Assembly (NCBI GenBank): GCA_036785375.1 | Contig: JAWMAR010000007.1 | Coordinates: 11,222,001-11,286,000, forward strand | Reading direction: 5' to 3' | DNA length: 64,000 nt | DNA from: Leucoraja ocellata | Lineage: Eukaryota | Part shown: one piece after another, positions 30,319-64,000 of the stretch | How the letters are laid out: each line of letters opens with the position of its first letter | Position numbering within the stretch: the stretch's first letter is position 1 | The notes under the pieces: model-generated | What the model was told of the DNA's origin: nothing | Database searches by the model: none | The model's input: only the letters and a program-made list of their open reading frames with translations | Translations under genes and position numbers: made by a program

Positions 30319-30420
30319 CTCGGATAGAGAAAGATTTAAAATATGGACATTATTCATTGGTCGGATGCATTACCCACATTTATTTTTATCAATACTTTAC
30401 CTGTGTCTGTGACCATGTTG

Positions 30421-33230: not shown

Positions 33231-36200
33231 ATTTTACTTCGGAGTCACGTGTGTGACTATGTGAAGAAGGGCTGTCCGTCTGCGTGCGCGTCATTACGTC
33301 TGAACGCAATGCACACGACGGACTGGCAGAGGCACTGGGTCCTCCCAGCCGTCGGGATTTTCAAAAAACAAGCGGCAGGTAAGGAAAGTTGATTTATTAA
33401 CCTGCGTTCTTTTCGGGCTTGAAGCTGTTGTAATTTCAGAGCCCAGATGTCGAGGAGACGGTCCGCAGGGAAGTCGGCTACCGATGACCGCAGCATTCCC
33501 AGTAGCGGGCGACGGTTTTGTCCCCGACATTACCGCCGGCAGCAGCAAACTTGGTGCGGGAGGACAGCACTGTGGTGGTCCCGGCGGGATGTAAAACCAC
33601 CCACATGTCTGACAGACCCATTGACTCGGATGAGTCCGGGGAAGAGGGATACCCTCCCTCAACGGAGAGCGTCCGAGGACGACTCTTCCACATGGAGCAA
33701 CTTATGGAGAAGTTGCTCCACGATGATCTGCTCCGAAGGAGGGAGCAGTATCAGCACGGGCCTCTACAGCAGACCGTGCCAGGAGCCTCACACATGGGGC
33801 AGTACAATGTCTTCCCCATTGGAGGGGGAAGAACATATGGAAGAAACCACTCTGAGTCAGAATACAAAAGCACGGGGGGGGGAACCTTCCCAGGGACGAG
33901 CAGAAGAAGTACCTCTGCAATCATCCAGGTTTGCTATCACAACACCACTGGGTGCTTCCCTGGATGAAGATCTAGCTAATAATATCAATTACCGAGCATC
34001 CCATCAACTTTAAGACCTGGCCATGGAAGGAACCATGAACAGGTACCCCCCACCAGCTACTGTGCTCCCCTGAAGGTCCAAGCAGTGAACCATGTCATCT
34101 GGGGACAGATTGGACCTATCATCCTAAACCAAGAAGTAAAATTCCAGAAGGTATTAAACCTACTGGGGTCTGGGATCACATCATTTGCAGGAGGAGTGGA
34201 AGATGGACTCCTCACTGACAGAGAACAGGACACAATGGCACTATTGTGTTATATCCACTTTGAGAGAAATTGTATTCGGAAGAATGCAATCAAACCATCA
34301 ATTAACTTGAAGTTCGCTGTCCTGTGTAAAGCCAGCAATGTCTAGCCCGCAAACTACCTGTTCGGGGAAGACCTGCCGAGACAGGCACGGGATCTGGACG
34401 ACGAGGCAAGAATGATCCACCTAATAACCAGAGGTCAGGTTACCCAAAAGGGTTCATCGCCAAGGATGCATCATACAGCTCTCTACGTTTTACGCCTAGA
34501 GGGCCAGGCACTGGAGGATGACCCACGCCGGAGTCAAGATCTTTTTAGGAGCAGGGCCCAGCCGGCCTACAGCAAGGATGAGGAGAGAACAACCACCATT
34601 TCAACCTCCAAAGCCTCGCGAACAAAAACCAGCGCCATACCGCCAGTAACGTCAGAGGTAAGCCAAACCAGTTCCTTAGGGAACACCCCAGACAAGCCTC
34701 ACATACTGGTGGGAGGAAGGTTAAAATATATTTTGAAAGAATGGTGTTGGGTCACAACGGATCCGTTTGTGCTGCACAGTATAGAAGGGTTCAAAATTGA
34801 GTTCATTTTGAATTCATCACCACCCACAACACATTCAAAATTTTGCACATAGGTGTTCTTTCAACAAGAAACTATGGATATACAGGAGGAAATTGGAACT
34901 TTATCTGACAAAAATGTAATTGAGAGGTCACATACAGAACCTCACCAATTTATATCCAATATATATCTCAAAAGAGAGAAAATATAGAGGGTCCGCATCA
35001 TTCTGGATCTTACGGAACTCTAAACATATGTGCAATATAAACATTTCAAAATGGACAATTTTGGAAGGGCAACTCAGTTGGTTTCCAAAAATGATCACAT
35101 GCCATGCATCGACCTCGAAGATGCATACTATTCGGTGTCTATTCACAAAGAGCAGGAGATATTTGAAGTTTAACTGGATGGGTCAATAATGGAAATACAT
35201 GGCTCTGCCAAATGGGTTGACATCAGCTCCTAGACTCTTGACTAAACTACTGAAACCAATTCTGGGTCTACTAAGGTCTCAGAACCACATAGTCATGGCA
35301 TAGTCATTGGATAGTTATATGGACAGGAAGGGAATGGAAGGTTATGGTCTGAGCGCAGGTATATGGGACTAGGGGAGAATATGTGTTCGGCACGGACTAG
35401 AAGGGTCGAGATGGCCTGTTTCCGTGCTGTAATTGTTATATGGTTATATGGTTATATGGTTATATTTGGATGACATTTTCATTTTTGGAGTCACCAAGAA
35501 TTGGCAGAAACATCAGTCAAAGCAAACCAAAACCCTGTTTGAAAGACTTGGTTACCTCATCCATCCAGTTAAATCAAAATTGACACCTACAAGGGTAATT
35601 GATTACCTAGGATTTACTATCAAACACAATAAATATGTTGGTGACTTTGCCTTTGGGAAAACACCAAGATTTGAGTAAGCCTGCTAGGACCTGATAGTCA
35701 AATACAAGCCATCTATCAGGCAAACAGCGAGTGTAATTGGCAAATAGTAGCTGCATTTCCAGCAGTACGTTACGGGCCTTTGCATTTCCAGAATTTACAG
35801 CGAGCAAAGGAATGAACACTCAGATTCCATGCAGGCCAAATTGGCAAAACTATGGATTGCCAGCAGAGACCATTGTTGAATAACAACGGTGGATAACGAA
35901 CGTGAGACAGCTCAAGGGAAATCTTGCTCGAAAGCCCATCGGTGGTTCTTCAAACCGATGCAAGCAGCTAAGGATGGGGAGCCACAAACACAGTCAAGAG
36001 CTGTGGGGGCAGATGGAATGAGCAGGAGTCTGTATTCCACAACAACATAGAATAAATTACCTAGCATTGTTTGGGGCACAATATGGGCTCAAGGTTTTCT
36101 GTAACAACATGCAACTTGTGCGTTCAAATTCAGATTGATAACACCAAAGCGGTGGCATATATCAATCACAAGGGTGGTGTAAAATCTGTATCTTGTGACA

Positions 36201-38122
36201 GATTGTCAAACCTCATTTGGCACTGGTGTATCGAGAGGGATATTTGGGTTACGGCGGTCTATCTACCAGGTAGATATATCACTGTGACAGATGCTAGATC
36301 ACGAATGTTTAATGATAACACAGAATGGATGTTGAATCGGGCAGTATTTAATGAAATAACTACACAATTTGGCATACCAGATATTGATCTGTTTGCATCT
36401 AGACTAAACCATCAGTTACCCAGATATGTGTCCTGCGAGCTGGATCCAGGAGCAGAGGCAGTGGATGCTTTCTCCCTCAAATGGGGAGGAATGTTTATGT
36501 ATGCTTTTCCGCCAATTTGTCTCACAAACCGATGCTTGACCAAAATCAAGCAAGACTAAGCCACAGGTATATTGGTAGTGCCAGATTGGCCTACTCAAGC
36601 CTGGTCCCCAAAACATTTTGGGAATATAGTCCAGCCATTTATGGCTGTACCCAAGAGCAGGGACCTCCTAGTGAACCCAATTACAGGGAGCAATCATTCA
36701 CTACATGAACGTATTAACTTGTTGGTCTGCAGATTCTGAGGAGGCCATTTCAAGGGATAGGACTGTCCGAATAAATACAACACAGTTCGGATAACGGATG
36801 TCTTGGAGTTCCTATCACCTCTGTACTATAATTATAAACAAAGTTATAGTGCAATCAATAGTGCCAGAAGCGCACTCTACTCCTATCTGATGGAAGCAGG
36901 GCATGGGTCGATAGGAAGGCACCCCTTTACAACAAAGTTTATGAAGGGAATTTACAATTCAATACCTCCAAGGCCAAGTACATGGACACATGGGATGTGA
37001 GCGTGGTACTAACTCTACTTCGACAGTGGGGACCGCCTATGGCCTTATCATTATAAAAACTAACCCTGAAGGTGGTACGCTGATGGCACTACTACCAGCA
37101 CAAAGGGTCCAGACACTGCAAAAGCTATGATTGGACTACATGACCACCAATATGCACAACATAACATTCGTAATCAGGAACTTGCTAAAACAGAGCAGGC
37201 CAGGAATGCCAGGGATGAAGATCCAGTTCTTGGCATATCCAGAGAACTAACGGTTGTGTGTGTGTGGTAACATACTAACACTACTATCTGAGAGTTACGG
37301 AGAACCTCAGAGGCTCAGAACAATCGGTCCTCATCAGCCATAAAAAACCACATCAGAAGGTGTCAACTCAAACCATCTCCAGATGGTCAAAGGAGGCAAT
37401 GGCGCTAGCAGGAGTGAACATTCATATCGTTAAATCTCACTCCACCAGGGCTGCATCTACGTCGGCAGCAAGAGCTATGAATGTGCTCCTTGACAACATC
37501 TCTTTGGCTGCAGAATGGACAAATAAACGAACGGTCCACCGGTTTTATAACAAACCCATAACCAGACCGGGGGTGTTTGCACGTACCATTTTAAGTTCTG
37601 TTCCCTAATTTCCCCCCAAGGTTGGGAGGGGTAACTATTTAAAAAAAACTTTTTCTTTCATTTAAAGCATCAGTGTCTTTACTTAACTACGTAATGTCTG
37701 AATGCTTTAATGATTACACTCATCCATGGTCAATCCATTCAGTGTGTGACGCCTGGATTCGTAACCGGCGTAAAATCACAGAGCTTTGAAATCTTCACAT
37801 AGTCACTCACGTGACTCCGAAGTAAAAGATTAAATGAGAACTTGCCAGTTTGAAGTTTGATCTTGATTTTATGAGGAGTTACGATGAGCGATTACGTGCA
37901 CACCGCTCCCACCCTCATACTATCAAGGTCATCTGGAAGTTCTAGTTTCTTCACAATTTTACTATTCTCAGGTATTCTTTTTATCTGTGATTTAACATCG
38001 CTGCTTTGAAGATTGACGCACACGCAGATGAACGGCCCTTCTTCACGTAACCGCTCATCGTAACTCCTCATAAAATCAAGATCAAACTTCAAACTGGTAA
38101 GTTCTCGTTTAATCTTACTATT
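33231..38122 (+). mobile_element. Full-length but decayed DIRS1-type tyrosine-recombinase retrotransposon
   Basis: RT (LPNGLTSAP, YLDD), RNase H (TDAS, DNTKAVAYINHKGG), methyltransferase-like (DLFASRLN...YAFPP) and YR (HSTRAASTS) domains. Has inverted termini and an internal complementary region at 37793-37898. Confidence 0.92.
35303..35462 (+). mobile_element. Short CR1 3' end inserted in the DIRS RT
   Basis: Matches the end of the CR1 at 59280-59345 and carries a (ttatatgg)n tail. It splits the HIVMA|YLDD coding sequence. Confidence 0.8.
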
Positions 38123-39307
38123 CTTCCAACCTCATCTATTGCATTTGGTGTCCCCAATATGATGAATACTTGTGTTCAGTCTGCCAAGGCCTGCTGGAGC
38201 TCCTGATTACCAAGCTTTTTAACTCCTCGTTCTGTTCTCACACCAACCTGATTGTCACTGGCCTTGTGTATTATCAGTGTGAGAACACACGCACATTGGA
38301 AGAACAGCACCTCATGGTCAGCTTGAGTAGCTTATAACCCAACCGTATGAACACTGAACTCTCAAAGTTCGTAAATCCCCCTCCCCCCCCCTCCCCCCCC
38401 ACACCAGCCCACTGTGCACACATTGCTCCATTATCCCTGTCACACTGCTCCTTTCCTCTCCCGTATTCATCTCCCATCCTCGAATCCCATAGTTCCTTCT
38501 ATCACGTCTTTCACCTGCCCATCTCCCCTGGCCCATTCCATCCATTTGCCTCCACCTTTACATTTTGTTTCCTTGTCTGACACCTTTTACCACTTTTCAC
38601 CACTCGCCATTATCACTGTCTCCACCCATCTGATAAGCATCTCCCCCGTGCCCCCCTCCCCCACCTCCATCCACCTTTCATTGGGCAAGCTTTGCCCCGT
38701 TCCCATCTTTCTCCCTACTACTCCATTAGTTTGAAGGGAACCGACCCGGATAATTGCCTGTCCATTTCCTCCACCAATGCTGCTTGACCCACTGTGTCTT
38801 CAGCACTTTGTGTTTTGCTCATGGTTCCAACATCTGCAGTTTCTAGTGCCTCAATGGGATGATTTGTCTGGATGGCACTCGGAAAAATATCACTGTATCT
38901 CAGTGCAATAGACAATAATAAACCAATACCAATATCTGAAACTTAACTGGAGGAGATATAATATGTGACTATAACAGCAGGCCAGATGTGGCAATGACAT
39001 CACCCCATTCCACAGTGACTGGACATCATGGTCAAGGCAGAAATGAGGAGTATGAGTGAAGATGGTTATCAAAACTACAGCAGGATCGTGATCAGCGGGG
39101 CAAGTGGGTTGAGGGTTGGTTAATAGAGTTAAAATTCAGTTTAGTGCAACGTGATGTATTTTAGACAGTCAAACCAGGGCATGATCTCCCAGTGATGTAG
39201 CCAACAAGTCAGCAGCTTGAACAATTGCCAGCCATGCCAGTAACATCGGAATCACAGGAAGCAGGAAGGAAGACAAATTGTTTGTTTGCAGCACAATCAT
39301 TCCTCAC

Positions 39308-39691
39308 CTGGTATTTTGATAGGCCCATGTGCGCATTCATACATTGCCTTTGTTTGCTCTGTGAGCTCAACACGACAGTAGAGGGTCTTGATTGTATCCG
39401 TCGTTCTCAGCTGATTAATGATTATGGAAGCATCGTTCTTCCGAGGGTCCCCCATTCGTCGGTAGTGAGCTCCTACATTATACACAATATCATTTTTACA
39501 CGTGCCGCTTGATAGATAATTTTTGTATTCGAAAAGGGTCTTCTTGGGCTTCTCCTCTTTCCAGATGATGTTGATGTTGCCTTTGTATTCATGGTGAGGG
39601 TGAGTGAACTTGCAGTACAGAACCACGAGCTTCCCCTCCCTCCCCATCACCTTGTCCGGTGTCTCTATGGACCAACCACTGGTATTGCAGC
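39308..39691 (-). CDS. Siglec-15-like receptor, exon 2 (V1, sialic-acid-binding-type V-set domain)
   Basis: Acceptor tgtgtcttcacag, donor G|GTGAGG, 384 nt, phase 1/1. Motifs WSIETP, LYCKFTHPHHEYKG, GDPRKNDASI, YCRVE and YECAHG match the Siglec-15 V domain pattern (CTFTHPH, GNPRRNDLSL, FCRVE, YESRHG). Confidence 0.9.
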
Positions 39692-40269
39692 CTGTGAAGA
39701 CACAGAGATGTAACGTTAAGACTGAACTGAGGGCCACAGTCACTGTCGGAGGCTGCGCGCACCCTGGGTCCCTGCCCTTGTGGAAGACAGTTGAACTGTG
39801 ATGCTGCTGTGCTGTTTGTCACCGTCACCATGTGGTGAGCTGTGAGAAATGGGGAGGTGGGACTGTGACACTAACAGTGGTTCCCCTCCTCCGGGCTGTG
39901 CTGGCTCTTCACTAGAGCCACATCTCTCACAGCTATAAGCTGCTGTCCGGGAGAGACCTTGCATTTACATCACTTCCCTCACAGACAGGGGGTGGTCCAC
40001 AGAGCTTCACAGGTTTGAAGTGTTGGCGGTGAAGTAGCGTTGGGAATGCCACAGGCAAGTAGTGCACAGCAAGATCCCACAAAGGAAGTACCTGACCACT
40101 AATCGAGGATGTACACAGCTGGCACAGTGGAGCAGCTAGTGGAGCTGCTAACTCACAACTCTAGGGACTCAGAGTTTAATCCTGACCTCAGATGCTGTGT
40201 ACAGTTTGCACTTTCCATCTATAACTGCATGGGTTTCTCTTTCTTAGTTTGTTTCCCACATCTCAAAGA

Positions 40270-42510
40270 TAGAAACATAGAGACATAGAAAATAGGTGCA
40301 GGAGGAGGCCATTTGGCCCTTCGAGCCAGCACCGCCATTCATTGTGATCATGGCTGATCGTCCCCAATCAATAACCCGTGCCAGCCTTCTCCCCATATCC
40401 CTTGACTCCACTAGCCCCTGGAGCTCTATCTAACTCTCTCTTAAATCCATCCAGTAATTTGGCCTCCACTGCCCTCTGTGGCAGGGAATTCCACAAATTC
40501 ACAACTCTTTGGATGAAAAGATTTTTTCTCACCTCAGACCTTAAATGGCCTCCCCTTTATTCTAAGACTGTGGCCCCTGGTTCTGGACTCGCCCAACATT
40601 GTGAACAATTTTCCTGCATCTAGCTTGTTCAGTCCTTTTATAATTTTATATGTTTCTATAAGATCCCCCTCATCCTTCTAAACTCCAGCCTAGTCTTTTC
40701 AATCTATCCTCACATGACAGTCCCGCCATCCCAGGGGTCAATCTCATGAACCTATGCTGCACTGCCTCAATCACAAGAACGTCCTTCCTCAAATTAGGAG
40801 ACCAAAACTGTACACAGTACTGCAGATGTGGTCTTACCAGGGCCCTATACAACTGCAGAAGAACCTATTTACTCCGATACTGAAATCCTCTTGTTATGAA
40901 GCTTAACATTCCATTAGCTTTCTTCACTACCTGCTGCACCTGTAAGCCAACTTTCAGTGACTGGTGTACAAGGCCACCCAGGTCTCGCTGCACCTCCCCC
41001 TTACATAACCTAACCCCATTGAGATAATAATCTACCCTCTTGTTTTTGCCGCCAAAGTGGATAACCTCACATTTATCTATATTACACTGCATCTGCCACT
41101 CATCTGCCCACTCACTCAACCTGTCCAGGTCACCCTGCAACCTCCTAACATCCTCTTCACAATTCACACTGCCCCCCAGCTTTGTGTCATCCGCAAACTT
41201 GCTAGTGTAGCTCCTAATTCCCTCTTCCAAATCATTAATATATATGGTAAATAGTTGCGGCCCCAACACCAAGCTTTGCGGCAATCCACTCGCCACTGCC
41301 TGCCATTCTGAAAAGGACCCGTTCACTCCTACTCTTTGCTTCCTGTTTGCCAATCAATTTTCTATTCATGTCAAAACCCTACCCCCAATACCATGTGCTC
41401 TAATTTTAGTCACCAGTCTCCCATGTGGCACCTTATCAAAGGCTATCTAAAAGTCTAGACACACTGCATCCACTGGCTCCCCTTCATTCATTTTACTTGT
41501 CACATCCTCATAAAATTCCAGATGATTAGTCAAGCATGATTCCCCTTTCATAAATCCATGTTGACTTGGACTAATCCTTTTACTGCTATCCAATTGCCCC
41601 ATTATTACCTCTTTAATAATTGACTCCAGCATCTTTCTCACCACCGAAGTCAGGCTAACTGGTCTGCAATTCCCCGTTTTCTCTCTCGCTCCTTTCTTGA
41701 AAAATGGGATAACATTAGCAATCCTCCAATCCACAGGAACTGATCCTGAATCTATTGAACATTGGAAAATGATCACCAATGCGTCCACTAATTTTAGAGC
41801 CACCTCCCTGAGGAATCCTGGGATGCAGACCATCAGGCCCAGGGGATTTATCATCCTTCAGTCCCATTAGCCTACCCAATACTATTTCTAACCTAATAAA
41901 ATGTTCTTTCAGTTCCTTTACCCCCTTAGATCCTCTGTCCTTCAGTACATCTGGGAGATTGTTTGTGTCTTCCTTAGTGAAGACAGATCCGAAGTACCAA
42001 CTTTTCTGCCATTTCCTTGTCCCCATTATAATTTTACCCGTGTCTGCATTCAATGGACCCACATTTGACTTTGCTACTCTTTTTCCCATAACATATCTAA
42101 AGAAGCTTTTACTGTCCTTCCTTATATTCCTGGCCAGCTGCCCCTCATACTTCATCTTTTCAGCCCATATTGCCCGTTTTGTTTCCATCTGTTGTCGTAT
42201 GAAAGTTTCCCAATCCTCTGGCTTCCGACTACGCTTTGCTGTGTTATACATCTTTTCGTTTAGTTTTATTCTATCCCTAACTTCTCTTCTCACCCACGGT
42301 TGCCTCCTACTTAGAATCTTTCTTCCTTTTTGGAATGAAATGATCCTGCATCTTCCGATTATGCCCAGAAATTCCTGCCATTCCTGTTACATCGTCATTT
42401 CTGTTAGGATCCCTTTCCAGTCTACCTTGGCCTGCTCCTCTCTCATGCCTTCATAGTCCCCTTTGTTCAACTGCTTCACTGACACTTTAACCTTCTCCTT
42501 ATCAAATTGA
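40270..42510 (-). mobile_element. CR1 LINE, about 2.2 kb, 5'-truncated and frameshifted
   Basis: KSPGPDGLHP, NCRPVSLTSVV, QHGFMKG, KFADDTKLGG and a CR1 tail. Confidence 0.92.
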
Positions 42511-44846: not shown

Positions 44847-46994
44847 GAATGAATGAATGGATGATTGAATGCATGTATGTATGAATGAATGAATGCATGA
44901 ATAAGTTTATTGGCCAAGTATTCACAAACAAGGAATTTGCCTTTGTGATCCGCCCACATGTGACAACATGACATACAGTGACAGTTACGAATGATACATA
45001 AAACACTAAACATTAATAATAAAACACATTGATCAAACATGTGAATTAAATAAAATACCAGAGCAAAAGGAGGCTACAGATTGTTGGCTGTTGAGTAGAG
45101 CTAATAGTCATGGAAAAAAGCTGTTTTTATGTCTGGCTGTGGCAGCTTTGTCAGTCTGGAGTCGCCTTCCAGAGGGACATGATGCAAAGAGTTTGTGGCC
45201 AGGGTGAGAGGGGTCAGAGGTGATCTTATCCGCTCGCTTCTTAGCCTCTGCAGTGTACAGTTTGTCAATGGAGGGAAGGTTGCAGCCAATAACCTTCTTA
45301 ACTGATCGGACGATTCTCTGCAACCTCCGGAATTTTTTCAACTTTTTTTGTTTTTTTAGTATCTTTTAATGTATGTTTTTAATGTTCCTCTGTGCGTTTT
45401 GGTTGGGGGGGGGGGGGGGGGGGGGTAAGGGGGAAACCGCTTCGGTCACCTCCTCCACAGAGAGGCGACTTTTTCCAGGTCACCTCCCCGTGGTCAAACA
45501 GTGAAGGTTGGGCGGCTTTTCCCAGGGACGCGCCCGGGGCTCAGCGGTGGGCGCAGCGTGGGCTCTGGGAGTGGAGCAGGGGCTCGCCTGAGGGGGAGCG
45601 CTCCGTTTCATTGGTCCGCGGCAGCCGGCAGCCTGAAGCCCCGGTCTGCAGAGTTCCAGCTGGTGCGGCGTCTGCAGCCCGGGATCCCTCGTGGGGGACC
45701 CGGGGGTAGAAGAGCTCCAACTATGGGCCCGCGGCCAACTACTACCGCGGGCGCAGCGTGGACTTACTTACCATCAGGAGCGGGGTCCCAAGCCGGGGAA
45801 CCCTGTAGGGGAGCTCCAGATCGCCGGCCCTGCGGTCTGTGGTGCTTCTGGCTGCAGCATGGCGGGAACTTTAAATCTTCGACCGCCGGCCTGCGGTCTA
45901 CACCATCTTGAAGCCGCGGTCTCCGGTAGGGTTGCACCGATTCACGACTTACCTGGACTTTTTATCTTGTCTGTACATCTGGACGCCCGCAGCGACGGCT
46001 ACGAAGGGTTGAGGACCCGACCACAGGGGAAAATGGAGGAGGACTGGACAATCTTTGTGCCTTCCACCACAGTGATGAATGCTGTGGTAGATGTTTGTGT
46101 TACATTTTTATTGTGTATTTGTGTGTTCTTTATCATTGTACCGCTGCTGGCAAATTCATTTCACTTGCACTTTATGAGCAATGTGACGTATAAAACCGTA
46201 TTGTATTGTATTGTATTGTATTGTATTGTCGTGCTTGGTAGCTGAGCAAAACCAGACCATGATGGAGAAGGTGAGGACAGACTCTACGATGGCCGTATAG
46301 AATTGGACCATCATTGCCTGTGGCACATTGTGCTTCCTCAGCTGCCGTTGGAAATACATCCTCTGTTGTGCTTTTTTGACTGTGGAGTCGATGATAGCCC
46401 CCCACTTAAGGTTCTTGGAGATGATGGTTCCCAGGAACTTAAAAGACTCCACAGATGTGACTGTGGTATTGTTGATGGTGAGTGGGGTGAGGGGAGGGGG
46501 AACTCTCCTAAAGTCTACAATCAATTCCACTGCCTTAAGGGCATTGAGCTCCAGGTTGTTGCGTTGGCACCAGCACGCCAGCTGTGACACTTCCTGTCTG
46601 TAGGCAGATTCCTCCCCATCCTGGATCAGTCCAATCAGGGTTGCATTGTCCGCAAACTTGAGAAGCTTGACAGAGGTGTCTGTGGAGGTGCAGTTATTGG
46701 TGTAGAGAGAGTAGAGGAGAGGGGAGAGTGTGCAGCCTTGCCGTGCTCCTCTGCTGAGGGTCCGAGATGTGCTTTCCCAGACTCACATGCTGCTTCCTGT
46801 CTGTTAGAAAGCTGGTGATCCACCAACAGAGGGGTTCAGGTCACAGACAATTCGGAAAGTTTGGAGTGTAGTAGCTCTGGCACAATTAATCTAGGCTGTC
46901 TAGGTGCTGGAGGATGAAGTGCAGGCCTAGGCTGACTGTGTTACCCACTGTTCTATTGGCCCGATATGCAAACTGCAGAGGGTCCAGCAGGGGG
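44847..46994 (-). mobile_element. Rex1-type LINE interrupted by a GC-rich element (45332-46226)
   Basis: KFADNATLIG and KFLGTIIS motifs. The frame ATKHD|IRRLQR is rejoined across the insert. Has a (GAAT)n tail on the + strand. Confidence 0.85.
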
Positions 46995-47194
46995 NNNNNN
47001 NNNNNNNNNNNNNNNNNNNNNNNNNNNNNNNNNNNNNNNNNNNNNNNNNNNNNNNNNNNNNNNNNNNNNNNNNNNNNNNNNNNNNNNNNNNNNNNNNNNN
47101 NNNNNNNNNNNNNNNNNNNNNNNNNNNNNNNNNNNNNNNNNNNNNNNNNNNNNNNNNNNNNNNNNNNNNNNNNNNNNNNNNNNNNNNNNNNNNN
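46995..47194. other. Assembly gap (200 N)
   Basis: Run of n characters. Confidence 1.
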
Positions 47195-52798: not shown

Positions 52799-55273
52799 AA
52801 CTGTAGCACAGTGATTCAACTTCTATATTCAATACCTTGACTGAAGAAGGCCAATATATCAATAGCCTTGTTTACCATTTTTTTCGACCTTATCTCCTTG
52901 TGCCGCAACGTTCAGGGAACTATGAGCCTGTATTCCTCGATCCCTTTGGTCTATAACAAACCCCGGGGCTCGAACATTCACTGTGAAGGTTCTGCAACAC
53001 CTCACACCTCTCCATTACACTCTAGTAGCTATTCATCAGTCCACGTCCAGCTGATCAAGACCCTGCTGCAAGCTAACCACCGTCACCGTCTAGGACACCA
53101 CCCACTTTAGTGTCATCTTGGTTGAATTGTGGGAAGTTTTAGGCTGGAAACAGAATACATTGCATGAGCTTAACTGGGGCAGAGTGAAGGTGTTTATTCA
53201 ATGAAATGGAAGAATGATAGCAATTATCCCATGCAGGGAGATAACGTATGGGTAGCTATAGAAATGGATGAGGCAGCCAGTAATGAGGAAAAGAACAGCA
53301 ATATAAAAGAAGACATTAATAAGCTTCTACATTCAGAAGCACAATACTGTTAATGTGAGAGGGGAAACTAGGTAGTCCAACATAGACAAGTGTAAGATGG
53401 ACACAAAATGCTGGAGAAACTCAATGGGATTGGCAGCATCTCTGGAGAGAAGGATTGGGTGAAGTTTCGGGTCAAGACTGTCACTAATTTCTTCTCTCCA
53501 GAGGCTTGTCCTGCTGAGTTACTCCAGCATTTTGTATCTACCTTCGGTTTAAACCAGAATCTGCAGTTCCTACCTGCACATAGATAAGTGTAAGGTCATT
53601 CACTCTGGCCAGAGATAAAAACAAAGTTAGAAAACAATAATAAAGATGTGTGAAAGAAGCATGCAGGGCCAATGGGCTTTGGTGGACCTATGTGGCTTTG
53701 TCTGCATTCGATCTCTATGACCCCATGATCATTTGAGGATAGTGGATTTGTAATTCAACAACTTTTCCTCATCCTTCGTCCAATTCCATTGTACCCTTAT
53801 CCTTCCCCTGTAGGAGAAGAAAAACAAGTGGTTCTATTGAGAACCAATTCCTGGAAGTTTTTCCTTTCCCTAAAGCTCCTTTGGAAATTTCATTGACTGA
53901 TGATGATGATGATGAGGAGGAAGCTCTTCATGATGAATGTTGGGTGCTACTTGCTACACAGTTTGGCCTTCAATGGAGGTTGTGACCCAGAAAGATGATG
54001 TCAAGAGTGCGCACAAGAGGAAGGGGTCACAAGGTGATAGAGGCTGAGCAACCTCACTGGGAGATTTTGTGGACATTCAGAATCGAAAACAAAACATTCT
54101 CTTGTAAGGACTGATCCATTGCCACGATTGTGTTCCCTCCACCATCATCCCTGAACCGTGAAATTGAACATTAGCAAACATGTCGTGTAGAACAAATTGT
54201 TTCTATCCTTGATTATCCGTGATTATCTGATCTACACACCACCTGCACATTAACCAGTGATATGACTCCCTGTAAAATCTGCAAATCTGGTCTCCATTTC
54301 TGGAAAATCCCATATTTCCCCGAAAGTAAGCCAGGCTCTTGAAGGTCTTTGACCATTAGTTTCTAGAGAGGATGGTAAAAGAAGGAACAGTGTGCTACTG
54401 TACCATCCGATTGTAAGAAGATAATAGAAATCCTCTGCAAATCTCCACTTTTACTGTTCCTTTAAAAGTAACAATACTTTCTAAAATATTGCATATTGAT
54501 TAACATGAGTCTTACATTAAGAGATATCAGGACAGTACTTGAAAGTATAGAGAGCATAGATGGAAATTGTATTAATGCTGGCTAGTGAGATTAATATCAG
54601 TGGACATAATGGTCGGCAGAGACACAGTGATGCTGTACATCTCACTACCGTATTTAGATTCAGGACGTTTGATTTATCAGTGTGCCAGAAATCTAAATGT
54701 TAATGCTTAATTCAAATATGCCATAATTTATTGGAACGAGTTTAACCCAACGAAACTCAAACAGGTGCATACATTGCCATTATTATCATACACGTCAATG
54801 TTATTTTATCAAGTTAAGCACAGGTGACATATATAAGGATATGCCCCATTGTAATGTAGTGGTCTGCATGGTTTGCTTGTCAAAGATGGTAAAAGTCTTC
54901 AGGATATAGTGGACAGATAACAGAAATATACTGTATATACACATGGAATGATATATGTTGCTAGTATGAATGAAACAAGACATACGTTGCAGCCTGGTGT
55001 CTCAACATTAAAATGGGTCATATCTGTTATATTTCAGGACAATTATTCCTCAGTGTATATCCAAATGCTTAATTCCAGTATGCTGTGGAGGTGCCTCAGG
55101 AAGTGAGTTTAGAAATATAAACACCAGCACTTTAATCAAAGAAAAGCATGCAGTAGTTCTGCTTGGTTAAAATGCCTAAGATTCAAGGCATTGGACAAAT
55201 TTCAAAAGTCATTCTGAAAAGGGACAAAAGTTAATGAAAGACTGTGATGGTGACAGTGAATGGGCAAAACCAC

Positions 55274-55281
55274 TATAAAAA
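55274..55281 (+). promoter_or_regulatory. Candidate TATA box for the relaxin-like gene
   Basis: TATAAAAA about 210 nt upstream of the ATG in non-repeat sequence. Another TATAAA lies near 55117. Confidence 0.3.
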
Positions 55282-55484
55282 TGTTATACATATAAGTCAG
55301 GGACAGAAAAGATGTAAGAGGATAATTAAAATCGTTCGAGTAGACTGACCAAGTGGGAGCTGAGGCAGGAACAGAGATTGAGGTTAGCTTGAGGACAGAT
55401 TGAGAAGAGGGCCGCATTAGAGAGAGGGCTAGTCAACCCCCAGTGCACACACAGAGTGGATGAAGCTGACCACCGTGTGTCAAA

Positions 55485-55647
55485 ATGAGATGCCTGCTCT
55501 CCATCCTGGCCATTGGGCTGCTAATGCCCTCTCCCTCGCACACAGAAAGGGGAGAAGATGAATTGATAAAACTTTGCGAGCCAGACTATGTCATAAAACT
55601 CATTGAACTCTGCCAGAAGTTGAAACCTGACATTAACCATTTGGAGG
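55485..55647 (+). CDS. Divergent insulin/relaxin-family prepropeptide, first coding exon (signal peptide + B chain + start of C peptide)
   Basis: caaaATG start, hydrophobic leader MRCLLSILAIGLLMPSPS, then DELIKLCEPDYVIKLIELC (C-x11-C; compare relaxin EEVIKLCGRELVRAQIAIC). Phase-1 donor G|GTGAGT shortly after the B chain, as in insulin/relaxin genes. Confidence 0.72.
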
Positions 55648-57479
55648 GTGAGTACAGATATCCCTTCCATTTACCATTGGTGTAGGTGCCATTAACTGTG
55701 AGTTATGATGTGATTTAAGTGATAACTGGATTGTGAAAGAAGTGTTCACACTTACTTTGTTTTGATTCTGCAAATGAAGGTTGTGCAGGCCGAGCCAATT
55801 GATATTTTTAATGTAGAACTAGATAGATTCTTGATTAATACAGGTGTCAGTGGTTATGGGGAGAAGGCAGGAGAATGGGGTAAAGAGGGAAAGATAGTTC
55901 AGCCATGATTGAATGGTGAAGTGGACGATGTGCCGAATGGCCTAATTCTTCTCCTATCATTTATAAATCTATATGGGGCCCTTGAAAAACTCATCAGTGA
56001 ACTATCTGGATTTGACCTGTAGTCTCTGGTAGTTTAAGAAAGTGATCTGGGTGCCAGAAACTTTGGAGTAAAATCTGGGTGATCGGAAAGAAAAAGACCA
56101 TTTGGTCCTAGTCCTGGCACACGGAACTATTAACACCACATAGTGATATTATGCATATATTTGCACTATATTCTGCACGCTGGTATTTTTCACATTACAT
56201 TACCTGTTGTACTCCTCTAAGGTTTGATTGCACTCACGTATGGTATGATTCGCCTAATATATTTCTATAATCTGACCATTGCATCCTGAGGACATTTACC
56301 ATGTATGGTATGATTTGACTGAAACAAAGATTATTATCACTGATCTTGGTGCATGTGATAATAATAGTCTAATATCAATACCAATACATTTCTCCAAACA
56401 ATGTTGAGACTTGTTTCATAAAAGCAGCCAAGTTACAGTTTCTCTGCTAACCAATTCAATTGAAATTAATGGAATGGATAGCTATTTGTTTTCTAACTCT
56501 TTGTCCTTCTCCTTTGGCAGAATCCCCTCCCTTTCACTGTAATGTTCTGCAGTCAATTCTGACCTATTTACTCATCACCCAATGTGTTTTGCGGTGACCC
56601 CACTCCTTTTGCCACATGTTGGTCCAAAATGTAATCGTTATGAACTGGCCAAGAGGAAAAACAGTTGTAGGTAAAGATAACGGCACCCGTTCTTAGACCA
56701 TCAAATATAGAACAGTATAGCACTGTACAACTCCTCCCCCTTCTGTCATGGGGTAGACCGAGACTGACTCCCCCCACCCGCCCCTCCAAATACTTGGCCA
56801 TCCACAATCCTTTCCACTCATCCCTTTAATTTCATGTTTCATGTATTTTATGTTTTTATGACTGTTGGCAGATCAATTTCACCTGGGATAAATAAAGTTC
56901 TATCGTATTATATCTTATCGTAGGAACAGGTCCTGAGGCATACAATTAACATGTTGTGCCCGACATGATGCCAAGCTAAATTAATATCCCTCCATTCCCT
57001 GCATATTCATGTGACTATTTAAAAGCCTCTTAAACACCACTATCATATCTACCTCCACCATTACCCCAAGCAGCATGTCCAAGCACCAACTACCTTCTGT
57101 GTAAAATCACTTGCCCTGCACATCTTCTTCAATCAATGCCCCTCTCACTTTAAAGCTATGCCCTCAGGTCTTTGCCATTTCCATCCTGAGAAAACGGTTC
57201 TGACTGTCTTCTTATTCCCGTCTTGCATCACTGGGCTCCATTCTTCAACTTGCCCTCCTCAACGTTTATATTTCCATTATCTTCTCAAAAGTAATGAACA
57301 TGGTGGGGCGGAGGGAACGAGGTAATAGTAGCGTGAAGAAATTGGTTCATTGATGAATGTAAAATTTGCAAATGGCACACTGCCCCAATTTCCCTTGAAA
57401 ACCATGGCTCTTTCCAAGTAATAATTGGAACGAGCCATGGTTTTCAAAGGAAATTGGACACGGTTCAGAAAAATAGAGA

Positions 57480-59345
57480 GATCTACAATAATTATAGGCA
57501 GCATGGAGTAAATGAAGTGCTTGAGGAGTATAAATAATGCAAAAAGAATCTTAAGAAATAAATTAGACAAGGTAAAAGAAGATATGAGGTTGCTTTGGCA
57601 AGTAAGGTGAAAGTAAATCCAAAGGGTTTCTACAGCTATATTAATAGAAAAAGGATAATGAGTTATAAAATTGGTCCATTAGAGAGTCAGAGTGGACAAC
57701 TATCTGCAGAGCCAAAAGAGATGGGGGAGATATTGAATAATTTATTTTCTTCGGTATTCACCAAAGAGAAGGATATTGAATTACGTGAGGTAAGGGAAAC
57801 AAGTAGCTATAGAAATTATGAGATTCAAAGAAGAGGAAGTATAGACACTTTTGAAAAATATAAAAGTGGTTAAGTCTCCAGGTCCTGACAGGATATTCCC
57901 TAGTACATTGAGGGAAGTTAGTGTAGAAATAGCAGGGGCTATGACAGAAATCTTTCAAATGTCATTAGAAACGGGAATGGTGCCGGAGGATTGGCATACT
58001 GCACATGTTGTACCATTGTTTAAAAAGGATTCTAAGAGTAAACCTAGCAATTGTAGACCTGTTAGTTTGACATCAGTGGTGGGCAAATTAATGGAAAGGA
58101 TACTTAGAGATAACATATTTAAGCACCTGGATAAACAGGGTCTGATTAGGAACAGTCAACATGGAAGGTCATGTTTGACTAATCTTCTTGAATTTTTTGA
58201 AGAGGTTACTAATGAAATTGATGAGGGTAAAGCGGTGGATGTTGTATATATGGACTTCAGTAAGGCCTTTGCCAAGGTTCCACATGGAAGGTTGGTTAGG
58301 AAGGTTCAATTGTTGGGTATTAATGGTGTAGCAAGATGGATTCAACAGTGGCTGAATGTGAGGTGCCAGAGAGTAATGGTGGATGGCTGTTTGTCAGGTT
58401 GGAGGCCGGTGACTAGTGGGGTGCCTCAGGGATCTGTGTTGGGTCCACTGTTGTTTGTCATATACTTCAATGATCTGGATTATGGTGTGGTAAATTGGAT
58501 TAGTAAGTATGCAGATGATACTAAGATAGGTGGTGTTGTGGATAATGAAGTAGATTTTCAATGTCTACAGAGATATTTAGGCCATTTGGAAGAGTGGGCT
58601 GAAAGATGGCAGATGGAGTTTAATGCTGGTAAGTGTGAGGTGCTACATCTTGGCAGGGCAAATCAAAATAGGACATGCATGGTAATTGGTAGCGAATTGA
58701 GGAATGCAGTTGAACGGAGGGATCTAGGAATTAATGTGCATAGTTTCCTGAAGGTGGAATCTCATGTAGATAGGGTGGTAAAGAAAGCTTTTGGTGTGCT
58801 GGCCTTTATAAATCAGAGTATTGAGTATAGAAGTTGGGATGTAATGTTAAAATTGTATGAGGCATTGGTGAGGCCAATCCTGGAGTATGCTGTACAATTT
58901 TGGTCGCTCAATTATAGGAAAGATGTCAACAAAATAGAGAGAGTACAAAGGAGATTTACTAGAATGTTGCCTGGGTTTCAGCAACTAAGTTACAGAGAAA
59001 GGTTGAACAAGTTAGGTCTTTATTCTTTGGAGCGCAGAAGGTTAAGGGGGGACTTGATTGAGGTCTTCAAAATGATGCGAGGGATAGACAGAGTTGACGT
59101 GGATAAGCTTTCTCCATTGAGAGTAGGGAAGATTCAAACAAGAGGACATGATTTGAGAATTAAGGGACAGAAGTTTAGGGGTAACATGAGGGGGAACTTC
59201 TTTACTCAGAAAGTGGTAGCTGTGTGGAATGAGCTTCCAGTGGAAGTGGTGGAGGCAGGTTTGATTTTATCATTTAAAAATAAATTGGATAGGTATATGG
59301 ACAGGAAAGGAATGGAGGGTTATGGTCTGAGTGCAGGTAGATGAG
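57480..59345 (+). mobile_element. CR1 LINE with a long open RT frame (ORF 57851-59344)
   Basis: KSPGPD, RPVSLTS, YMDFSKAF, SGVPQGSVLGP, YADD and the CR1 C-terminus. Confidence 0.93.
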
Positions 59346-61192
59346 ACTCAGGTAGGGGAGAAGAAACGATCACTGTTCGACCTGCAGTTTGACATGCACA
59401 TTGTGCGAGTGGCTTCAAGAGCTGAGATTAGCTGCAGTCGTAACCACTGGTGGGAGACAGTTTCCCAGATTGGAAAGTCAACTGGAAGCCACCGCAAAGC
59501 AGGAAAGAGAATGGGCCCACCAATTTCCCGGTGAGGAAGTTTGTGTATTGGTGGATGAGGTGGAGAGGAGGAGTGAGTGTCCTGGTCTGTGTCGAGACTA
59601 AAGATGCAGCGGTATTAACATTGATTTCCTTCACTTCAAGTATTCCATCTCTTACCTCCTGCCCACCTAAGTTGTCCAACTACTGTTCACATCCTTGCAT
59701 CCCATTGTCATCACCTCTACCCCAGCCCACTATGGATGAATATTGGCTCCACCTTTCCTTGGTCATCAGTTGCCGGCTCTGCTTTTGTTCTGCCGTTTTC
59801 TTACCTCCGGTTCCCTCCACTCTACTTTCAGTCTGAAGAAGGGTCCCGACCTGAAACGTCACCCATCGTTTTTCTCCAGAGATGCTGCCTGACCTGCTAC
59901 TCCAGCACTCTGTATCTATCTTTGGTGTAAATCAGCATCTGCAGATCCTTTCTACACTAGAAAGATGCTTACGTTCATCAGCAAATGCCAATGGAGGCCA
60001 GTGTCCCAAAAGTAGTGCAGCTAGAAACTAAACAGTTTAGTTTAGTTTAGTTTAGTTTAGTTTAGTTTGGTTTAGTTTAGTTTAGTTTTGTTTAGTTTAA
60101 TTTAGTTTAGTTTAGTTTAGAGATCCAGTGTGGAAACAGGCCCTTCAGCTCACCGGTTCCGCACCAACCTGTACACTAATTCTATCCTACACATTAGGGA
60201 CAATTTATAGAGACCAATTGACCTACAAACCTGCACGCCTTTGGAATGTGGGAGGAAACCGGAGCACCCGGGAGAAAACCCAGGCGGTCATAGGGAGAAC
60301 ATACAAACTCCGTACAGACAGCATCTGTAGTCAGGATCAAACCCCGGTCTCTAATGCTGTCCTGTACTAGTCTATGTTATATGTGCATTGCTTCACTAGC
60401 ACATTTCCACCCCTGTCATTCTTAACAATGACTTCCAAGACTCATGATCACTGCCAAGAATTCAATAGCCTTACAACATCTTCTCAATTCACCATCTCTG
60501 CAGCTGTTCCAACAGGGCTCTCAGCTTGCATGCACTGCCTGCTATTTAACAATGATACCGCATCGTCTAGACACCTGACAAGACACACAATATGGCACCT
60601 TTCTTTCTCTTTCAGGAAACAGCCAGCAAGAACTGCAACATAACAACAAATGGGCCATCTCAATTGGTTCAGTGTTACTGAGTACAGACCTGGGCATTAC
60701 AGATCAAGGTGCCACAGAGTTGACACGTGGCCTTATGGTGACAATATGATTATTGAAGAAGATAGTCATGTCATAAGGTCATAAGTGATAGGACAGAATT
60801 AGACCATTCGGTCCATCAAGACTACTCTGCCATTCAATCTCCAGCTGATCTATCTCTCCCTCCGAATCCCATTCTCCTGCCTTCTCCCCATAACCTCTGA
60901 CACCCATACTAATCAAGAATCTATCTATCTCTGTGTTAAAAATATCCATTGACTTGGCCTCCACAGCCTTCTGTGGCAAATAATTCCACAGATTCACCAC
61001 CCCCTGACTAAATAAATTCCTCCTCATCTCCTTCTTAAAGGAATGTCCTTTAATTCTGAGGCTATGATCTCTTGTCCTAGACTCTCCCACTACTGGAAAC
61101 ATCCTCTCCACATCCATTCTATCCTGGCCTTTCACTATTGACTATTTAGTACAAGCCTTGTACTAAAATAGTATATTCATGCCTAATCTATC

Positions 61193-61496
61193 CGTGTGCG
61201 GACGTGGCGCTGATGGACGAGAGGCCGAAGCAAAGAAATAGGGTACGTGGCGTTTCGACAGAGCGGGCCATTCGGTAAGTTTGCTTTTAGGCAACGCAGC
61301 TTTTCAGTTCGTTGGCTTTTAGGCGTCCCACCCTTTTGGTTAGTTTGCATTTTGGCACCCCATCCTTTCGGTTAGTAGGCGTTTTGTCTTCATAATCTTT
61401 CGGTTTATTGGTGTTTCGGCCTCAATTCCATTCAGTTCTTTGGCTTCGACTTCTTTGCTTTGGCCTCTCGTCCGTCGGCGCCACATCCGGGTACCG
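61193..61496. mobile_element. MITE with about 40-bp TIRs and internal ttcgg-type subrepeats
   Basis: cggacgtggcgctgatggacgagaggccgaagcaaagaa versus ttctttgctttggcctctcgtccgtcggcgccacatccg, flanked by the direct repeat atctatc. Confidence 0.7.
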
Positions 61497-62396
61497 ATCT
61501 ATCTTCCTGCAACTTACTTTACCCTTGCTCTTACAATCCCTTCTGATTTACAAGTTGCAGCAGGATTAAGCATGATCCCCTCTTTATCAAACTACCTTTC
61601 TCCTTTCAGAGAGCTAAGATCTTCCAACGTAACAGGCCTGGACATTGAACAAGGAAGTGGGGAATGCTGGTGGGCCATGATCCCATGATGTGATCTGCCA
61701 TTAGTAGCCGCCAGTTCAGATATTCCCACTTGGTGAAGTGAAGAAGGTAGTTGTTCAGTACGATGCGCACAAGGCGTGTAACTGGACATGAATGGGGGGT
61801 AAAGGAGCTCAGGTGCTGGAGGGTAAAGTTGTGTATGCAAGAGAATAAGTTTGTAAGTTCATAAGTGATGGGAGCAGAATCAGCCCATTCGACCCATCGA
61901 GTCTCTCCACCATTCAATCATGGCTAATGATTGGTGGTGAATCTGTGGAATTCCTTGCTGCAGAAGGCTGTGGAGGCCAAGTCAGTGGATATATTTAAGG
62001 CAGAGATGGATAGATTCATGGTTAGTACGGGTGTCAGAGGTTATGGGGAGAAGGCAGGAGAATGGGGTTAGGAGGGAGAGATAGATCAGCCATGATTGAA
62101 TGGCGGAGTAGACTTGATGAGCTGAATAGCCTAATTCTACTCCTATCACTTCTGATCTTCTGATCTATCTTTCCCTCTCAACCCCATTCTCCTGCCTTCT
62201 CCCCATAACCCCATGTCATTGAAGTAGTCATCAGAAAAAGGCAGATAATTCCTCGTGGTGAGATGGTTGGTGCATTAGGAAGCAGACCTGAAAGCATGCA
62301 TGAAATGTGCAGCACAGAGGAAAGACCCTGTGCTTTCTGCAGGAAATGGACTTCCATCTTTCTGTGATGGAAGAGGTCATAGAATGATAGAGTGAT

Positions 62397-62678
62397 AAGG
62401 CCCTGTCCCACGTGGCGACTTTTTCAGCGACTGCCGGCGCCATATCAGCCAAAAGGTTTCTGTAATTTCAAAATCCAGCGGCGACAAAAAAGTGTCGCGA
62501 CACTTGAAAAAACACCGTGGGTCATACGTCATCATGCCGCGTCACCGCCGCATTAAACCGCATCACCACCGCATCACGTCGCAAATTTTTCGGTAACCTG
62601 ATACGTCAGTCAATCAGTTCGGTGACCTGATACGTCAGTTTCCAGCAGTCAGCGAAAAAATTGCCAAGTGGGACAGGG
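62397..62678. mobile_element. Harbinger-like MITE related to 24630-25294
   Basis: Ends aaggccctgtcccac...gtgggacaggg with a CpG-rich interior. Confidence 0.65.
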
Positions 62679-63104
62679 TAGAAACAGACCCTTCAGCTCA
62701 ACTTGCCCACACCGGCCAATGTGTCCCAGCTATATTAGTCCCACATGCCCGCGTTTGGTCCATATCCCTCCAAACCTGTCCGATTCATGTACCTGTCTAA
62801 CTGTTTCTTAAACATTGGAATAGTCCCTGCCTCAACTACCTCCTCTGGCATCTTGTTCCATACACCCACTGCCCTTTGTGTGAAAATCATGGCTCACTTC
62901 CCTTCAAATCCTGCAGCCTCCACAGGTGCCCTGATACGGATCTTGTCTCAAAACATGTGCCATCCCTCTGTCTCCACTGTTGCTGACTGACCCATTGAGT
63001 TGTTCCAACAAAAGAAAACTGCTGGAGGAACGCAGTGTTCAGATACTATCTGTGGAGGGAAATGGACAGAAATCTTGTTTTGTTTGGTGCAATGTCTGGC
63101 CTTT

Positions 63105-63975
63105 TAAAAAAATTCAAAAATAAACTATATTCATAAAAATACCTGTTCAAGAAATGCAAAGCAGTGCATGGCTTTCTTTACATTAATACTGTCATTCAAT
63201 CTATACATTCCTGGTGTCATAAGAACAAAATGCTGGAGTAACTCAGTGAGTCAGGCAGCACCTCTGGAGAAAAGGAGTTAGATGAAGGGTCTTGACCCAA
63301 AACGTCACCCATTCCTTTTCTCCAGAGAGGCCACCAGTTCTGATGAGTTACTCCAGCATTTTGTGTCTATCTTTGGTGTAAACCTGCATCTCCGGTTCCT
63401 TCCTACATGTTCCTGGTGTAATTTCTTGTACATTTCTTGCACAGATGCCATTCAGGTGACCTCAATGAACAGTACACCATTTTAGTGCTTATCACACAAC
63501 ACCCAACCCCTCAGTGTCCAGTAGTGGCAGAATGCTAGGCTGCAGTCCATCCCCACAGGGCCTTTGAATTGGCTGCACCAAGTTTCAGTGAATCTCTCGG
63601 CATGTACACCTGCAGCCCAGAAGGTGCCAGTTGGCAGCATTCCCATAGGGATATCTCTTTCTACTGGAAGGTCAAAACTGTTTCTGGCAGACTGAAGTGC
63701 ATCTTTCACTGAGCTGATGATCTTGCAGCTGCATTTACTGCCTAGTCTTGGCACAGCCCGTTGATCAGGGAGCCCAGCGTTATGCACCTTCTCGGGATGA
63801 ACCTCAACAAACACCCTTGGAGGGTGTTTCCAGGTGTTCTTTGCAAACAAACCATCCACAAAGAGGTGGGCATTCAGCTTGTCCTCATTGTGACCATACT
63901 GAAGGCAATGGCAATGGCGATCAGACAATCCGCTAGATTGTTTTGACAGCCTGCTCAGGAACCATCCCTGAAGAT
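63105..63975 (-). mobile_element. Tx1/L1-clade 3' remnant
   Basis: ORF 63482-63979 contains a zf-RVT-like ED...HLF...FAKNTW segment, followed by a T-rich 3' end. Confidence 0.5.
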
Positions 63976-64000
63976 CCATGTGGGAAGGAACTACAGATGT

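What the first reader, a model, noticed from the sequence alone, without database searches (positions are those of the whole stretch)
55485..55647. Divergent insulin/relaxin-family hormone exon lacking the relaxin receptor cassette and both B-chain glycines
Seen: a signal peptide, DELIKLCEPDYVIKLIELCQ with exact C-x11-C spacing, and a phase-1 GTGAGT donor 11 codons later. Established: insulin/relaxin genes have this exon layout, relaxins use CGRxxxRxxI...CG, and the Gly after the first Cys is nearly invariant. Here it is CEP...CQ, with Pro and Ile at the two Arg positions, so RXFP1-type binding is unlikely. Inference: this is a fast-evolving elasmobranch relaxin paralogue with a new or no receptor. 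From memory, a relaxin-like protein was reported in stingray alkaline-gland fluid; I cannot verify any relationship. I found no CC-x3-C-x8-C A chain on the + strand up to 64000, so the intron exceeds 8 kb or the exon is lost.
Basis: partly seen in the sequence, partly recalled or inferred. Interest (0 to 1): 0.8.

Follow-up and report, generated by a model that had tools for sequence, protein, structure and literature searches.

The report
Divergent shark relaxin-like hormone gene, exon one
This stretch is very probably the first coding exon of a secreted insulin/relaxin-type hormone gene of a cartilaginous fish, from a small divergent branch that has lost the usual relaxin receptor-binding residues, so its receptor and role are unknown.

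Summary
At 55485-55647 (+) there is an ATG, a signal-peptide-like start, two Cys spaced C-x11-C, and a phase-1 G|GTGAGT donor.

It is not a chance ORF. An exhaustive HMMER search of 1.84 billion proteins gave 3 hits at E <= 0.001:
- the ORF itself;
- a 63-aa ORF from an unnamed assembly (about 50% identity);
- a 159-aa bamboo shark protein, GCC25586.1 (47% identity over residues 1-49).

The shark protein ends in a canonical CC-x3-C-x8-C A chain. It passes Pfam Insulin at 25.1 bits against a cut-off of 23.

All three sequences carry Glu or Asp in place of the Gly after the first Cys. None has RxxxRxxI/V.

The exon alone scores nothing in Pfam. No A-chain exon lies in the window. Other first-stage notes of this scan place one about 1.9 kb beyond the window's end, followed by two more relaxin-like genes. 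I could not check those notes.

Four RNA runs gave no reads, which is no test. The receptor, expression and intactness of the gene remain open. This is a new member of a known family, of moderate interest.

The parts
55485..55647 (+). First coding exon (start codon to last exonic base): 54 codons plus 1 nt, phase 1
   Evidence: Searches give the ORF and its frame. Searches show homology to P0003 and P0002 from residue 1. It is the only one of 2106 six-frame pieces of the window that matches P0003 (35.7 bits; next best 8.2).
55485..55544 (+). Signal-peptide-like segment (about residues 1-20: Met-Arg, 12-residue hydrophobic core, Pro/Ser-rich end); cleavage point not predicted by a tool
   Evidence: Read directly. 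M1, C3, L4, I7, G11, L12 and L13 are invariant in the 3-sequence alignment.
55545..55647 (+). B-chain domain with Cys31 (55575-55577) and Cys43 (55611-55613), C-x11-C; Glu after Cys1, Gln after Cys2; no RxxxRxxI/V, no Trp
   Evidence: This part alone aligns to P0003 residues 26-48 at 31.6 bits, 12 of 23 identical.
55648..55653 (+). Splice donor GTGAGT
   Evidence: The read-through residues of P0001 (G-E-Y) and P0002 (S-E-Y) after residue 54 suggest a donor at the same codon and phase in the relative. This is inferred from protein letters only.
55654..64000 (+). Start of the presumed intron (at least 8.3 kb), holding LINE reverse-transcriptase remains (57595-59344 +, 60779-61135 -)
   Evidence: No A-chain motif or match to P0003 occurs here. 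The RT ORF matches Pfam RVT_1 at 102.8 bits.
55274..55281 (+). TATAAAAA, 204-211 nt upstream of the ATG: a possible core promoter element (inference only)
   Evidence: No transcript data support it.

Best explanation
55485-55647 (+) is the first coding exon of a gene for a secreted prepro-hormone of the insulin/relaxin superfamily. It encodes the signal peptide and the B-chain domain. The two B-chain Cys would form the two inter-chain disulfides with an A chain encoded by a second exon. That exon lies beyond the window, after an intron of more than 8.3 kb that interrupts the connecting (C) domain in phase 1.

The gene belongs to a small divergent branch seen so far only in cartilaginous-fish data. 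In this branch an acidic residue replaces the Gly after the first B-chain Cys, and the relaxin RxxxRxxI/V cassette is absent.

Shown: the exon anatomy, the homology, and the family membership of the full-length relative. Inferred: the peptide is made, is processed to a two-chain form, and does not act through the RXFP1/2 cassette contact. That would make it an orphan ligand, in the way INSL4 and INSL6 were described in mammals.
For: Searches give the ORF, the C-x11-C spacing and the phase-1 GTGAGT donor.

One search found 3 hits at E <= 0.001 among 1,835,955,588 proteins: P0001 (the ORF itself), P0002 (E 1.6e-4) and P0003 (E 4.0e-4).

One search shows that P0003 (159 aa) has the same start and B chain, a long C domain with basic sites, and a C-terminal CC-x3-C-x8-C.

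One search identifies P0003 as Chiloscyllium punctatum GCC25586.1, which UniRef names 'Insulin-like 3'.

One search gives P0003 a Pfam Insulin score of 25.1 bits against a cut-off of 23, over residues 29-157 and model positions 2-81 of 81.

One search shows that its A chain aligns to the INSL3 and relaxin A chains of solved structures, weakly (E 0.16-0.8).

Searches give pairwise BLASTP results: 23 of 48 and 23 of 44 residues identical, and 31.6 bits for the B-chain part alone.

One search lists the invariant columns, which include K29, L30, C31, D34, L39, L42 and C43.

One search shows a single match in the window.

the exon's nearest language-model cluster is a chordate cluster in which 23% of members carry Pfam Insulin. 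The score of 0.84 makes this a lead only.

Searches return unchecked notes of this scan. They report an A-chain exon 1910 nt beyond the window's end, followed by two more relaxin-like genes.
Against: The exon alone has no Pfam hit and no relevant match among solved structures.

I did not see the A-chain exon of this gene. The note that reports it gives a non-canonical CC-x3-C-x9-C spacing, which could mean decay.

There is no transcript evidence: 0 reads in 4 of 4 RNA runs, and tissues are unknown. The tool itself calls this no test.

Only 2 relatives exist, and one has unknown origin. It could be a paralogue from the same genome.

An out-of-frame ATG at 55460 lies 25 nt upstream of the start. 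It would compete with the start if it is transcribed.

The AlphaFold model of P0003 was poor (mean pLDDT 49.9) and found no insulin-like fold. The Gly-less B chain is therefore not shown to fold like insulin.

Exon 1 has no dibasic site after the B chain.
Confidence: 0.72

Rival explanations
1. Relic or pseudogene: a once-functional relaxin-like gene whose first exon is still open by chance. Its A-chain exon is lost or damaged, and it is no longer expressed.
For: No A chain lies in the window. An unchecked note reports odd CC-x3-C-x9-C spacing for the A chain downstream. No RNA reads were laid. The otherwise conserved Gly and the receptor cassette are absent. The presumed intron is long and full of LINE remains.
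Against: The start codon, both Cys, the hydrophobic B-helix positions and the donor are all kept. The same Gly-less, cassette-less B chain occurs in P0002 and in the intact full-length P0003, so these features are ancestral to the branch and not decay. Exon length (54 codons plus 1 nt) appears identical in P0002.
Confidence: 0.15
2. It is the cartilaginous-fish orthologue of INSL3, the name UniRef gives to P0003, and acts through an RXFP2-type receptor.
For: UniRef names P0003 'Insulin-like 3'. The best relaxin-family match to P0003's A chain among solved chains is human INSL3 (15.7 bits, E 0.16).
Against: The name is automatic. The INSL3 score ties with relaxin A chains (14.0 and 13.4 bits). 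Nearest language-model clusters are prorelaxin, relaxin-3a, an arthropod insulin-like peptide cluster and INSL5, all at 0.92-0.93, which discriminates nothing. The B chain has none of the Arg or Trp determinants recalled for INSL3. The only neighbours seen in the window are Siglec-15-like Ig exons.
Confidence: 0.1
3. Chance ORF: the signal-like start, the C-x11-C and the GT donor coincide in non-coding DNA.
For: The exon alone has no Pfam score. The pattern arises in about 1 of 200 random windows, so a very large scan will meet chance cases.
Against: There are significant, full-length-of-exon matches to two independent database proteins, one a bona fide Insulin-family protein. This is the only such match among 2106 pieces of the window.
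Confidence: 0.03

Closest known systems
Chiloscyllium punctatum hypothetical protein chiPu_0003997 (GCC25586.1; UniRef 'Insulin-like 3'), P0003
   Same: It shares the N-terminal start and signal core, the same C-x11-C B chain with an acidic residue after Cys1, Asp at +3 and hydrophobic positions kept. It has no RxxxRxxI/V. Identity is 23 of 48 residues.
   Different: Only about 47% identical. It has Ser where the window has Pro, and Ala-Asn after Cys2 where the window has Gln-Lys. It has an Arg-Arg site soon after the B chain that the window's exon lacks. Its A chain is known and canonical, whereas the window gene's A chain was not seen.
Relaxin / relaxin-3 / INSL5 / INSL3 peptides (relaxin-like family, Pfam PF00049)
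   Same: Prepro layout with a signal peptide, a B chain with two Cys 11 residues apart, a long C domain and an A chain (the last two seen in the relative). The coding region is split within the C domain, a layout I recall rather than tested. The family definition by the Cys motif comes from passages of PMC551602.
   Different: It lacks the relaxin-specific RxxxRxxI/V motif that PMC551602 uses to define relaxins. It lacks the Gly after each B-chain Cys. No Trp follows the second Cys.
Glycosylated relaxin-like molecule of the male Atlantic stingray (Bullesbach, Schwabe and Lacy 1997; seen only as cited)
   Same: A cartilaginous-fish relaxin-like peptide whose B chain lacks the relaxin-specific motif, and which was therefore set aside as 'not a functional relaxin' (passage of PMC551602).
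   Different: No N-x-S/T site occurs in the window's exon or in P0003's A chain. Identity with that molecule is untested.
Mammalian INSL4 and INSL6 (orphan relaxin-locus paralogues)
   Same: [quoted passage not shown] The window gene is said by unchecked scan notes to head a tandem cluster.
   Different: They are mammal-specific duplications with no orthology. The comparison is an analogy of evolutionary situation only.

Membership tests
Insulin/relaxin superfamily (Pfam PF00049) | N-terminal signal peptide | tested here: met
   Met-Arg followed by a 12-residue hydrophobic core, read. It is conserved with P0002 and P0003. No signal-peptide predictor was available.
Insulin/relaxin superfamily (Pfam PF00049) | B chain with two Cys spaced C-x11-C | tested here: met
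   Cys31 and Cys43. They are invariant in the alignment.
Insulin/relaxin superfamily (Pfam PF00049) | A chain with CC-x3-C-x8-C | not testable with these tools
   None lies in the window, and the sequence beyond 64000 cannot be read. It is present in relative P0003. An unchecked scan note reports CC-x3-C-x9-C 1910 nt beyond the window.
Insulin/relaxin superfamily (Pfam PF00049) | Score above the Pfam Insulin gathering cut-off | tested here: inconclusive
   The exon alone matches 0 families at E <= 10, but the model spans both chains. Full-length relative P0003 scores 25.1 bits against a cut-off of 23.
Insulin/relaxin superfamily (Pfam PF00049) | Gly after the first B-chain Cys (GlyB8, fully conserved in vertebrate insulins per passages of PMC12796670) | tested here: not met
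   The residue is Glu in the window, Asp in P0002 and Glu in P0003. This is a conserved residue, not a formal criterion of the family.
Relaxins proper (RXFP1-type ligands) | B-chain RxxxRxxI/V motif (criterion used in PMC551602) | tested here: not met
   Pro and Ile stand at the two Arg positions, and Ile is kept at the third. The motif is likewise absent in P0002 and P0003.
Relaxin-3 / INSL5 type (RXFP3/4 ligands) | Arg-Trp near the B-chain C-terminus (recalled, from no call) | tested here: not met
   No Trp occurs anywhere in residues 1-54. The B chain could in principle run on into exon 2, which I did not see.
INSL3 orthologue | Orthology by tree or by synteny with JAK3 (recalled) | not testable with these tools
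No named relaxin-family sequences were retrieved. Only Siglec-15-like Ig exons were seen as neighbours.
Stingray alkaline-gland relaxin-like protein | Sequence identity or orthology with the published two-chain peptide | not testable with these tools
   The paper is not held. No such hit appeared.

The most novel reading that the evidence does not exclude
A cartilaginous-fish lineage of insulin-superfamily hormones has given up both the otherwise conserved Gly next to the first B-chain Cys and every known RXFP-binding motif, yet is kept intact across species. That would imply a different B-chain turn geometry and an unknown receptor or a non-hormonal role, for example as a reproductive-fluid protein like the one purified from stingray. 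The gene would sit at the head of a tandem relaxin-like cluster.
Probability: 0.3. Interest if true: 0.6.

Novelty: new member of a known kind. Interest (0 to 1): 0.45.

Why it matters
Relaxin-family evolution in cartilaginous fishes is poorly charted. Passages of PMC551602 show that the one motif-less elasmobranch peptide then known was simply set aside.

A conserved branch lacking the cassette and the GlyB8-equivalent would be useful in two ways. It would be a natural experiment on how much of the insulin fold's 'invariant' core is dispensable. It would also be a candidate orphan ligand for receptor de-orphanisation.

If the branch turns out to be a decaying duplicate instead, it is ordinary.

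Tried and rejected
Searches that gave nothing useful:
- Pfam and solved-structure searches with the exon alone gave nothing relevant. The two designed-repeat hits are compositional.
- Three word-indexed protein searches found only the three sequences already known. These were whole P0003, the exon-1 alignment, and P0003 residues 100-159. They yielded 1 hit among 11 candidates, 2 among 21 and 1 among 2. No tree against named relaxins could therefore be built.
- The AlphaFold2 model of P0003 from a 3-row alignment had mean pLDDT 49.9. It showed helices at 35-46, 136-147 and 150-157. Foldseek against PDB gave no match at E <= 0.001. VIA-align wide gave a best Z of 5.5 to unrelated helical proteins. 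Structure says nothing either way.
- Four RNA runs laid on 55000-55760 gave 0 reads, and the tool marks this as no test. No listed holder of the stretch is on record as RNA.
- No paralogous exon 1 or A-chain exon lies in the window, on either strand.
- Synteny: the only genes recognisable upstream are Siglec-15-like Ig exons on the minus strand. I know of no link between these and relaxin loci.

Literature:
- Searches found no paper in the held library describing this Gly-less branch. The library lacks most subscription journals.
- I read passages only of PMC551602, PMC2805637, PMC12702675, PMC2803784 and PMC12796670.
- PMC3310001 returned no occurrence of my terms.
Alignments there might include elasmobranch relaxins.

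Only exon 1 was used, because exon 2 lies outside the window. The N run at 46995-47194 was left alone.

Full report
**What is in the sequence.** On the + strand an ORF opens at ATG 55485. It reads Met-Arg, then a 12-residue hydrophobic core, then a Pro/Ser-rich stretch. After that comes ...DELIKLCEPDYVIKLIELCQKLKPDINHLE. The two Cys codons are 55575-55577 and 55611-55613, with exactly 11 residues between them. After 54 codons, base 55647 (G) is followed by GTGAGT at 55648-55653, which is a phase-1 donor. If the donor is not used, the frame stops at 55683-55685.

At the positions of the relaxin RxxxRxxI/V motif the residues are Pro, Ile and Ile. Passages of PMC551602 define that motif. Glu follows the first Cys and Gln follows the second.

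**Is it more than chance?** I counted the combined pattern: ATG, a basic residue, a hydrophobic run, C-x11-C, and GT[AG]AGT within 20 codons. It occurs once in the real window, at this site. It occurred in 1 of 200 first-order Markov windows. That is rare, but not decisive for a scan of very many windows.

Homology decides the matter. An exhaustive phmmer search of the 54-residue exon product against 1,835,955,588 representative proteins gave 3 hits at E <= 0.001:
- P0001, the same ORF read into the intron, from an unnamed assembly.
- P0002, 63 aa, from an unnamed assembly, E 1.6e-4.
- P0003, 159 aa, E 4.0e-4.

Pairwise BLASTP gives 23 of 44 identical residues to P0002 and 23 of 48 to P0003. 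The part after the signal peptide alone aligns to P0003 residues 26-48 at 31.6 bits. Among 2106 six-frame pieces of the window, only this one matches P0003 (35.7 bits, next best 8.2). Only this one matches the exon-1 profile.

**What the relatives show.** P0003 is Chiloscyllium punctatum GCC25586.1. NCBI calls it a hypothetical protein, and UniRef automatically names it 'Insulin-like 3'. It has the same start and B chain, a long connecting region with basic sites, and a C-terminal CC-x3-C-x8-C. It passes Pfam Insulin at 25.1 bits against a cut-off of 23, over residues 29-157 and model positions 2-81 of 81. Its A chain aligns weakly to the INSL3 and relaxin A chains of solved structures (E 0.16-0.8).

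The three-sequence alignment has these invariant columns: M1, C3, L4, I7, G11, L12, L13, K29, L30, C31, D34, L39, L42 and C43. All three sequences have Glu or Asp where other family members have Gly after the first Cys. None has Gly after the second Cys, and none has the Arg cassette. These oddities are therefore traits of a branch, not damage in this copy.

P0002 has 54 residues and then S-E-Y where the window's read-through has G-E-Y. This fits a donor at the same codon and phase. It is inferred from protein letters only. I cannot tell whether P0002 is an orthologue from another species or a paralogue.

**What is missing.**
- The exon alone scores nothing in Pfam. This is expected, since the model spans both chains.
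- No A-chain exon lies in the window on either strand. The intron therefore exceeds 8.3 kb. It holds LINE reverse-transcriptase remains.
- Other first-stage notes of this scan, on the same genome, report an A-chain exon with CC-x3-C-x9-C spacing 1910 nt beyond the window's end. They also report two further relaxin-like genes downstream. This fits neatly, but I could not read that DNA, so it stays a lead.
I therefore had no genomic context for P0002 or P0003.
- No holder of the stretch is on record as RNA.
- Four RNA runs of the species label gave 0 reads on 55000-55760. Tissues are unknown, and the tool itself calls this no test.
- The AlphaFold2 model of P0003 was poor (mean pLDDT 49.9). Its helices lie where the B helix and the two A helices would be. 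Fold searches found nothing meaningful.

**How it most likely works.** The exon encodes the signal peptide and B-chain domain of a prepro-hormone. After signal cleavage, the two B-chain Cys would pair with A-chain Cys, as in all members of the family (PMC551602 passages). The connecting region would then be removed at basic sites. Such sites are seen in P0003, but not within this exon.

Two features argue against known receptor contacts. The RxxxRxxI/V cassette is absent. No Trp follows the second Cys, although the Arg-Trp motif of relaxin-3 and INSL5 is recalled from memory and comes from no call. Action through the known RXFP contact modes is therefore unlikely, so the peptide would be an orphan. 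This part is inference.

GlyB8 is fully conserved in vertebrate insulins (PMC12796670 passages). Its replacement by an acidic residue in all three sequences suggests a different turn before the B helix. This is untested.

**Comparison with what is known.** The closest entry is the bamboo shark protein. The closest described precedent is the glycosylated relaxin-like molecule of the male Atlantic stingray. PMC551602 says it lacks the relaxin-specific motif, and the authors did not consider it further. The original paper is not held, so a relationship is untested. No N-x-S/T site occurs in this exon or in P0003's A chain. The UniRef label 'Insulin-like 3' is not backed by anything I could test. 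Nearest language-model clusters tie between prorelaxin, relaxin-3a, an arthropod insulin-like peptide cluster and INSL5.

**Verdict.** It is unproven about rate of evolution and about the receptor. I file this as a new member of a known kind, with moderate interest. It would rise if the gene proves intact, expressed and conserved.

Noticed in passing
window 22944-39743, minus strand: Four V-set Ig exons (39297-39743, 29921-30301, 26667-27035, 24007-24381) match Pfam V-set at 25.9-54.1 bits. For two of the four I searched solved structures, and both best match Siglec-15 (E 7e-16 for 39297-39743 and 4e-07 for 24007-24381). A C2-set Ig exon with a hydrophobic segment lies at 22944-23483. Together they suggest one or more Siglec-15-like receptor genes upstream of the hormone exon.
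   Followed up: partly
window 19924-20532: A 20-bp minisatellite with 30.6 copies and 94% matches gives long open frames on both strands that are not genes.
   Followed up: partly
window 57595-59344 (+); also 4889-5623 (-), 7788-8189 (-), 40865-42293 (-), 27444-28193 (-), 60779-61135 (-): LINE-type reverse-transcriptase remains. The one at 57851-59344 is a 497-aa open frame (Pfam RVT_1, 102.8 bits) inside the presumed intron of the hormone gene. Only 57851-59344 and 4889-5623 were run against Pfam. The others are judged by eye from the ORF list.
   Followed up: partly
window 55460-55561 (+): An out-of-frame ATG lies 25 nt upstream of the hormone start and opens a 33-codon frame overlapping it. 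It matters only if the transcript starts further upstream.
   Followed up: no
window 45392-46245 (+): A G+C-rich stretch has long overlapping open frames rich in Gly, Arg and Pro, just before the N run at 46995-47194. It could be a CpG-island-like region or a first exon of another gene. I did not examine it.
   Followed up: no
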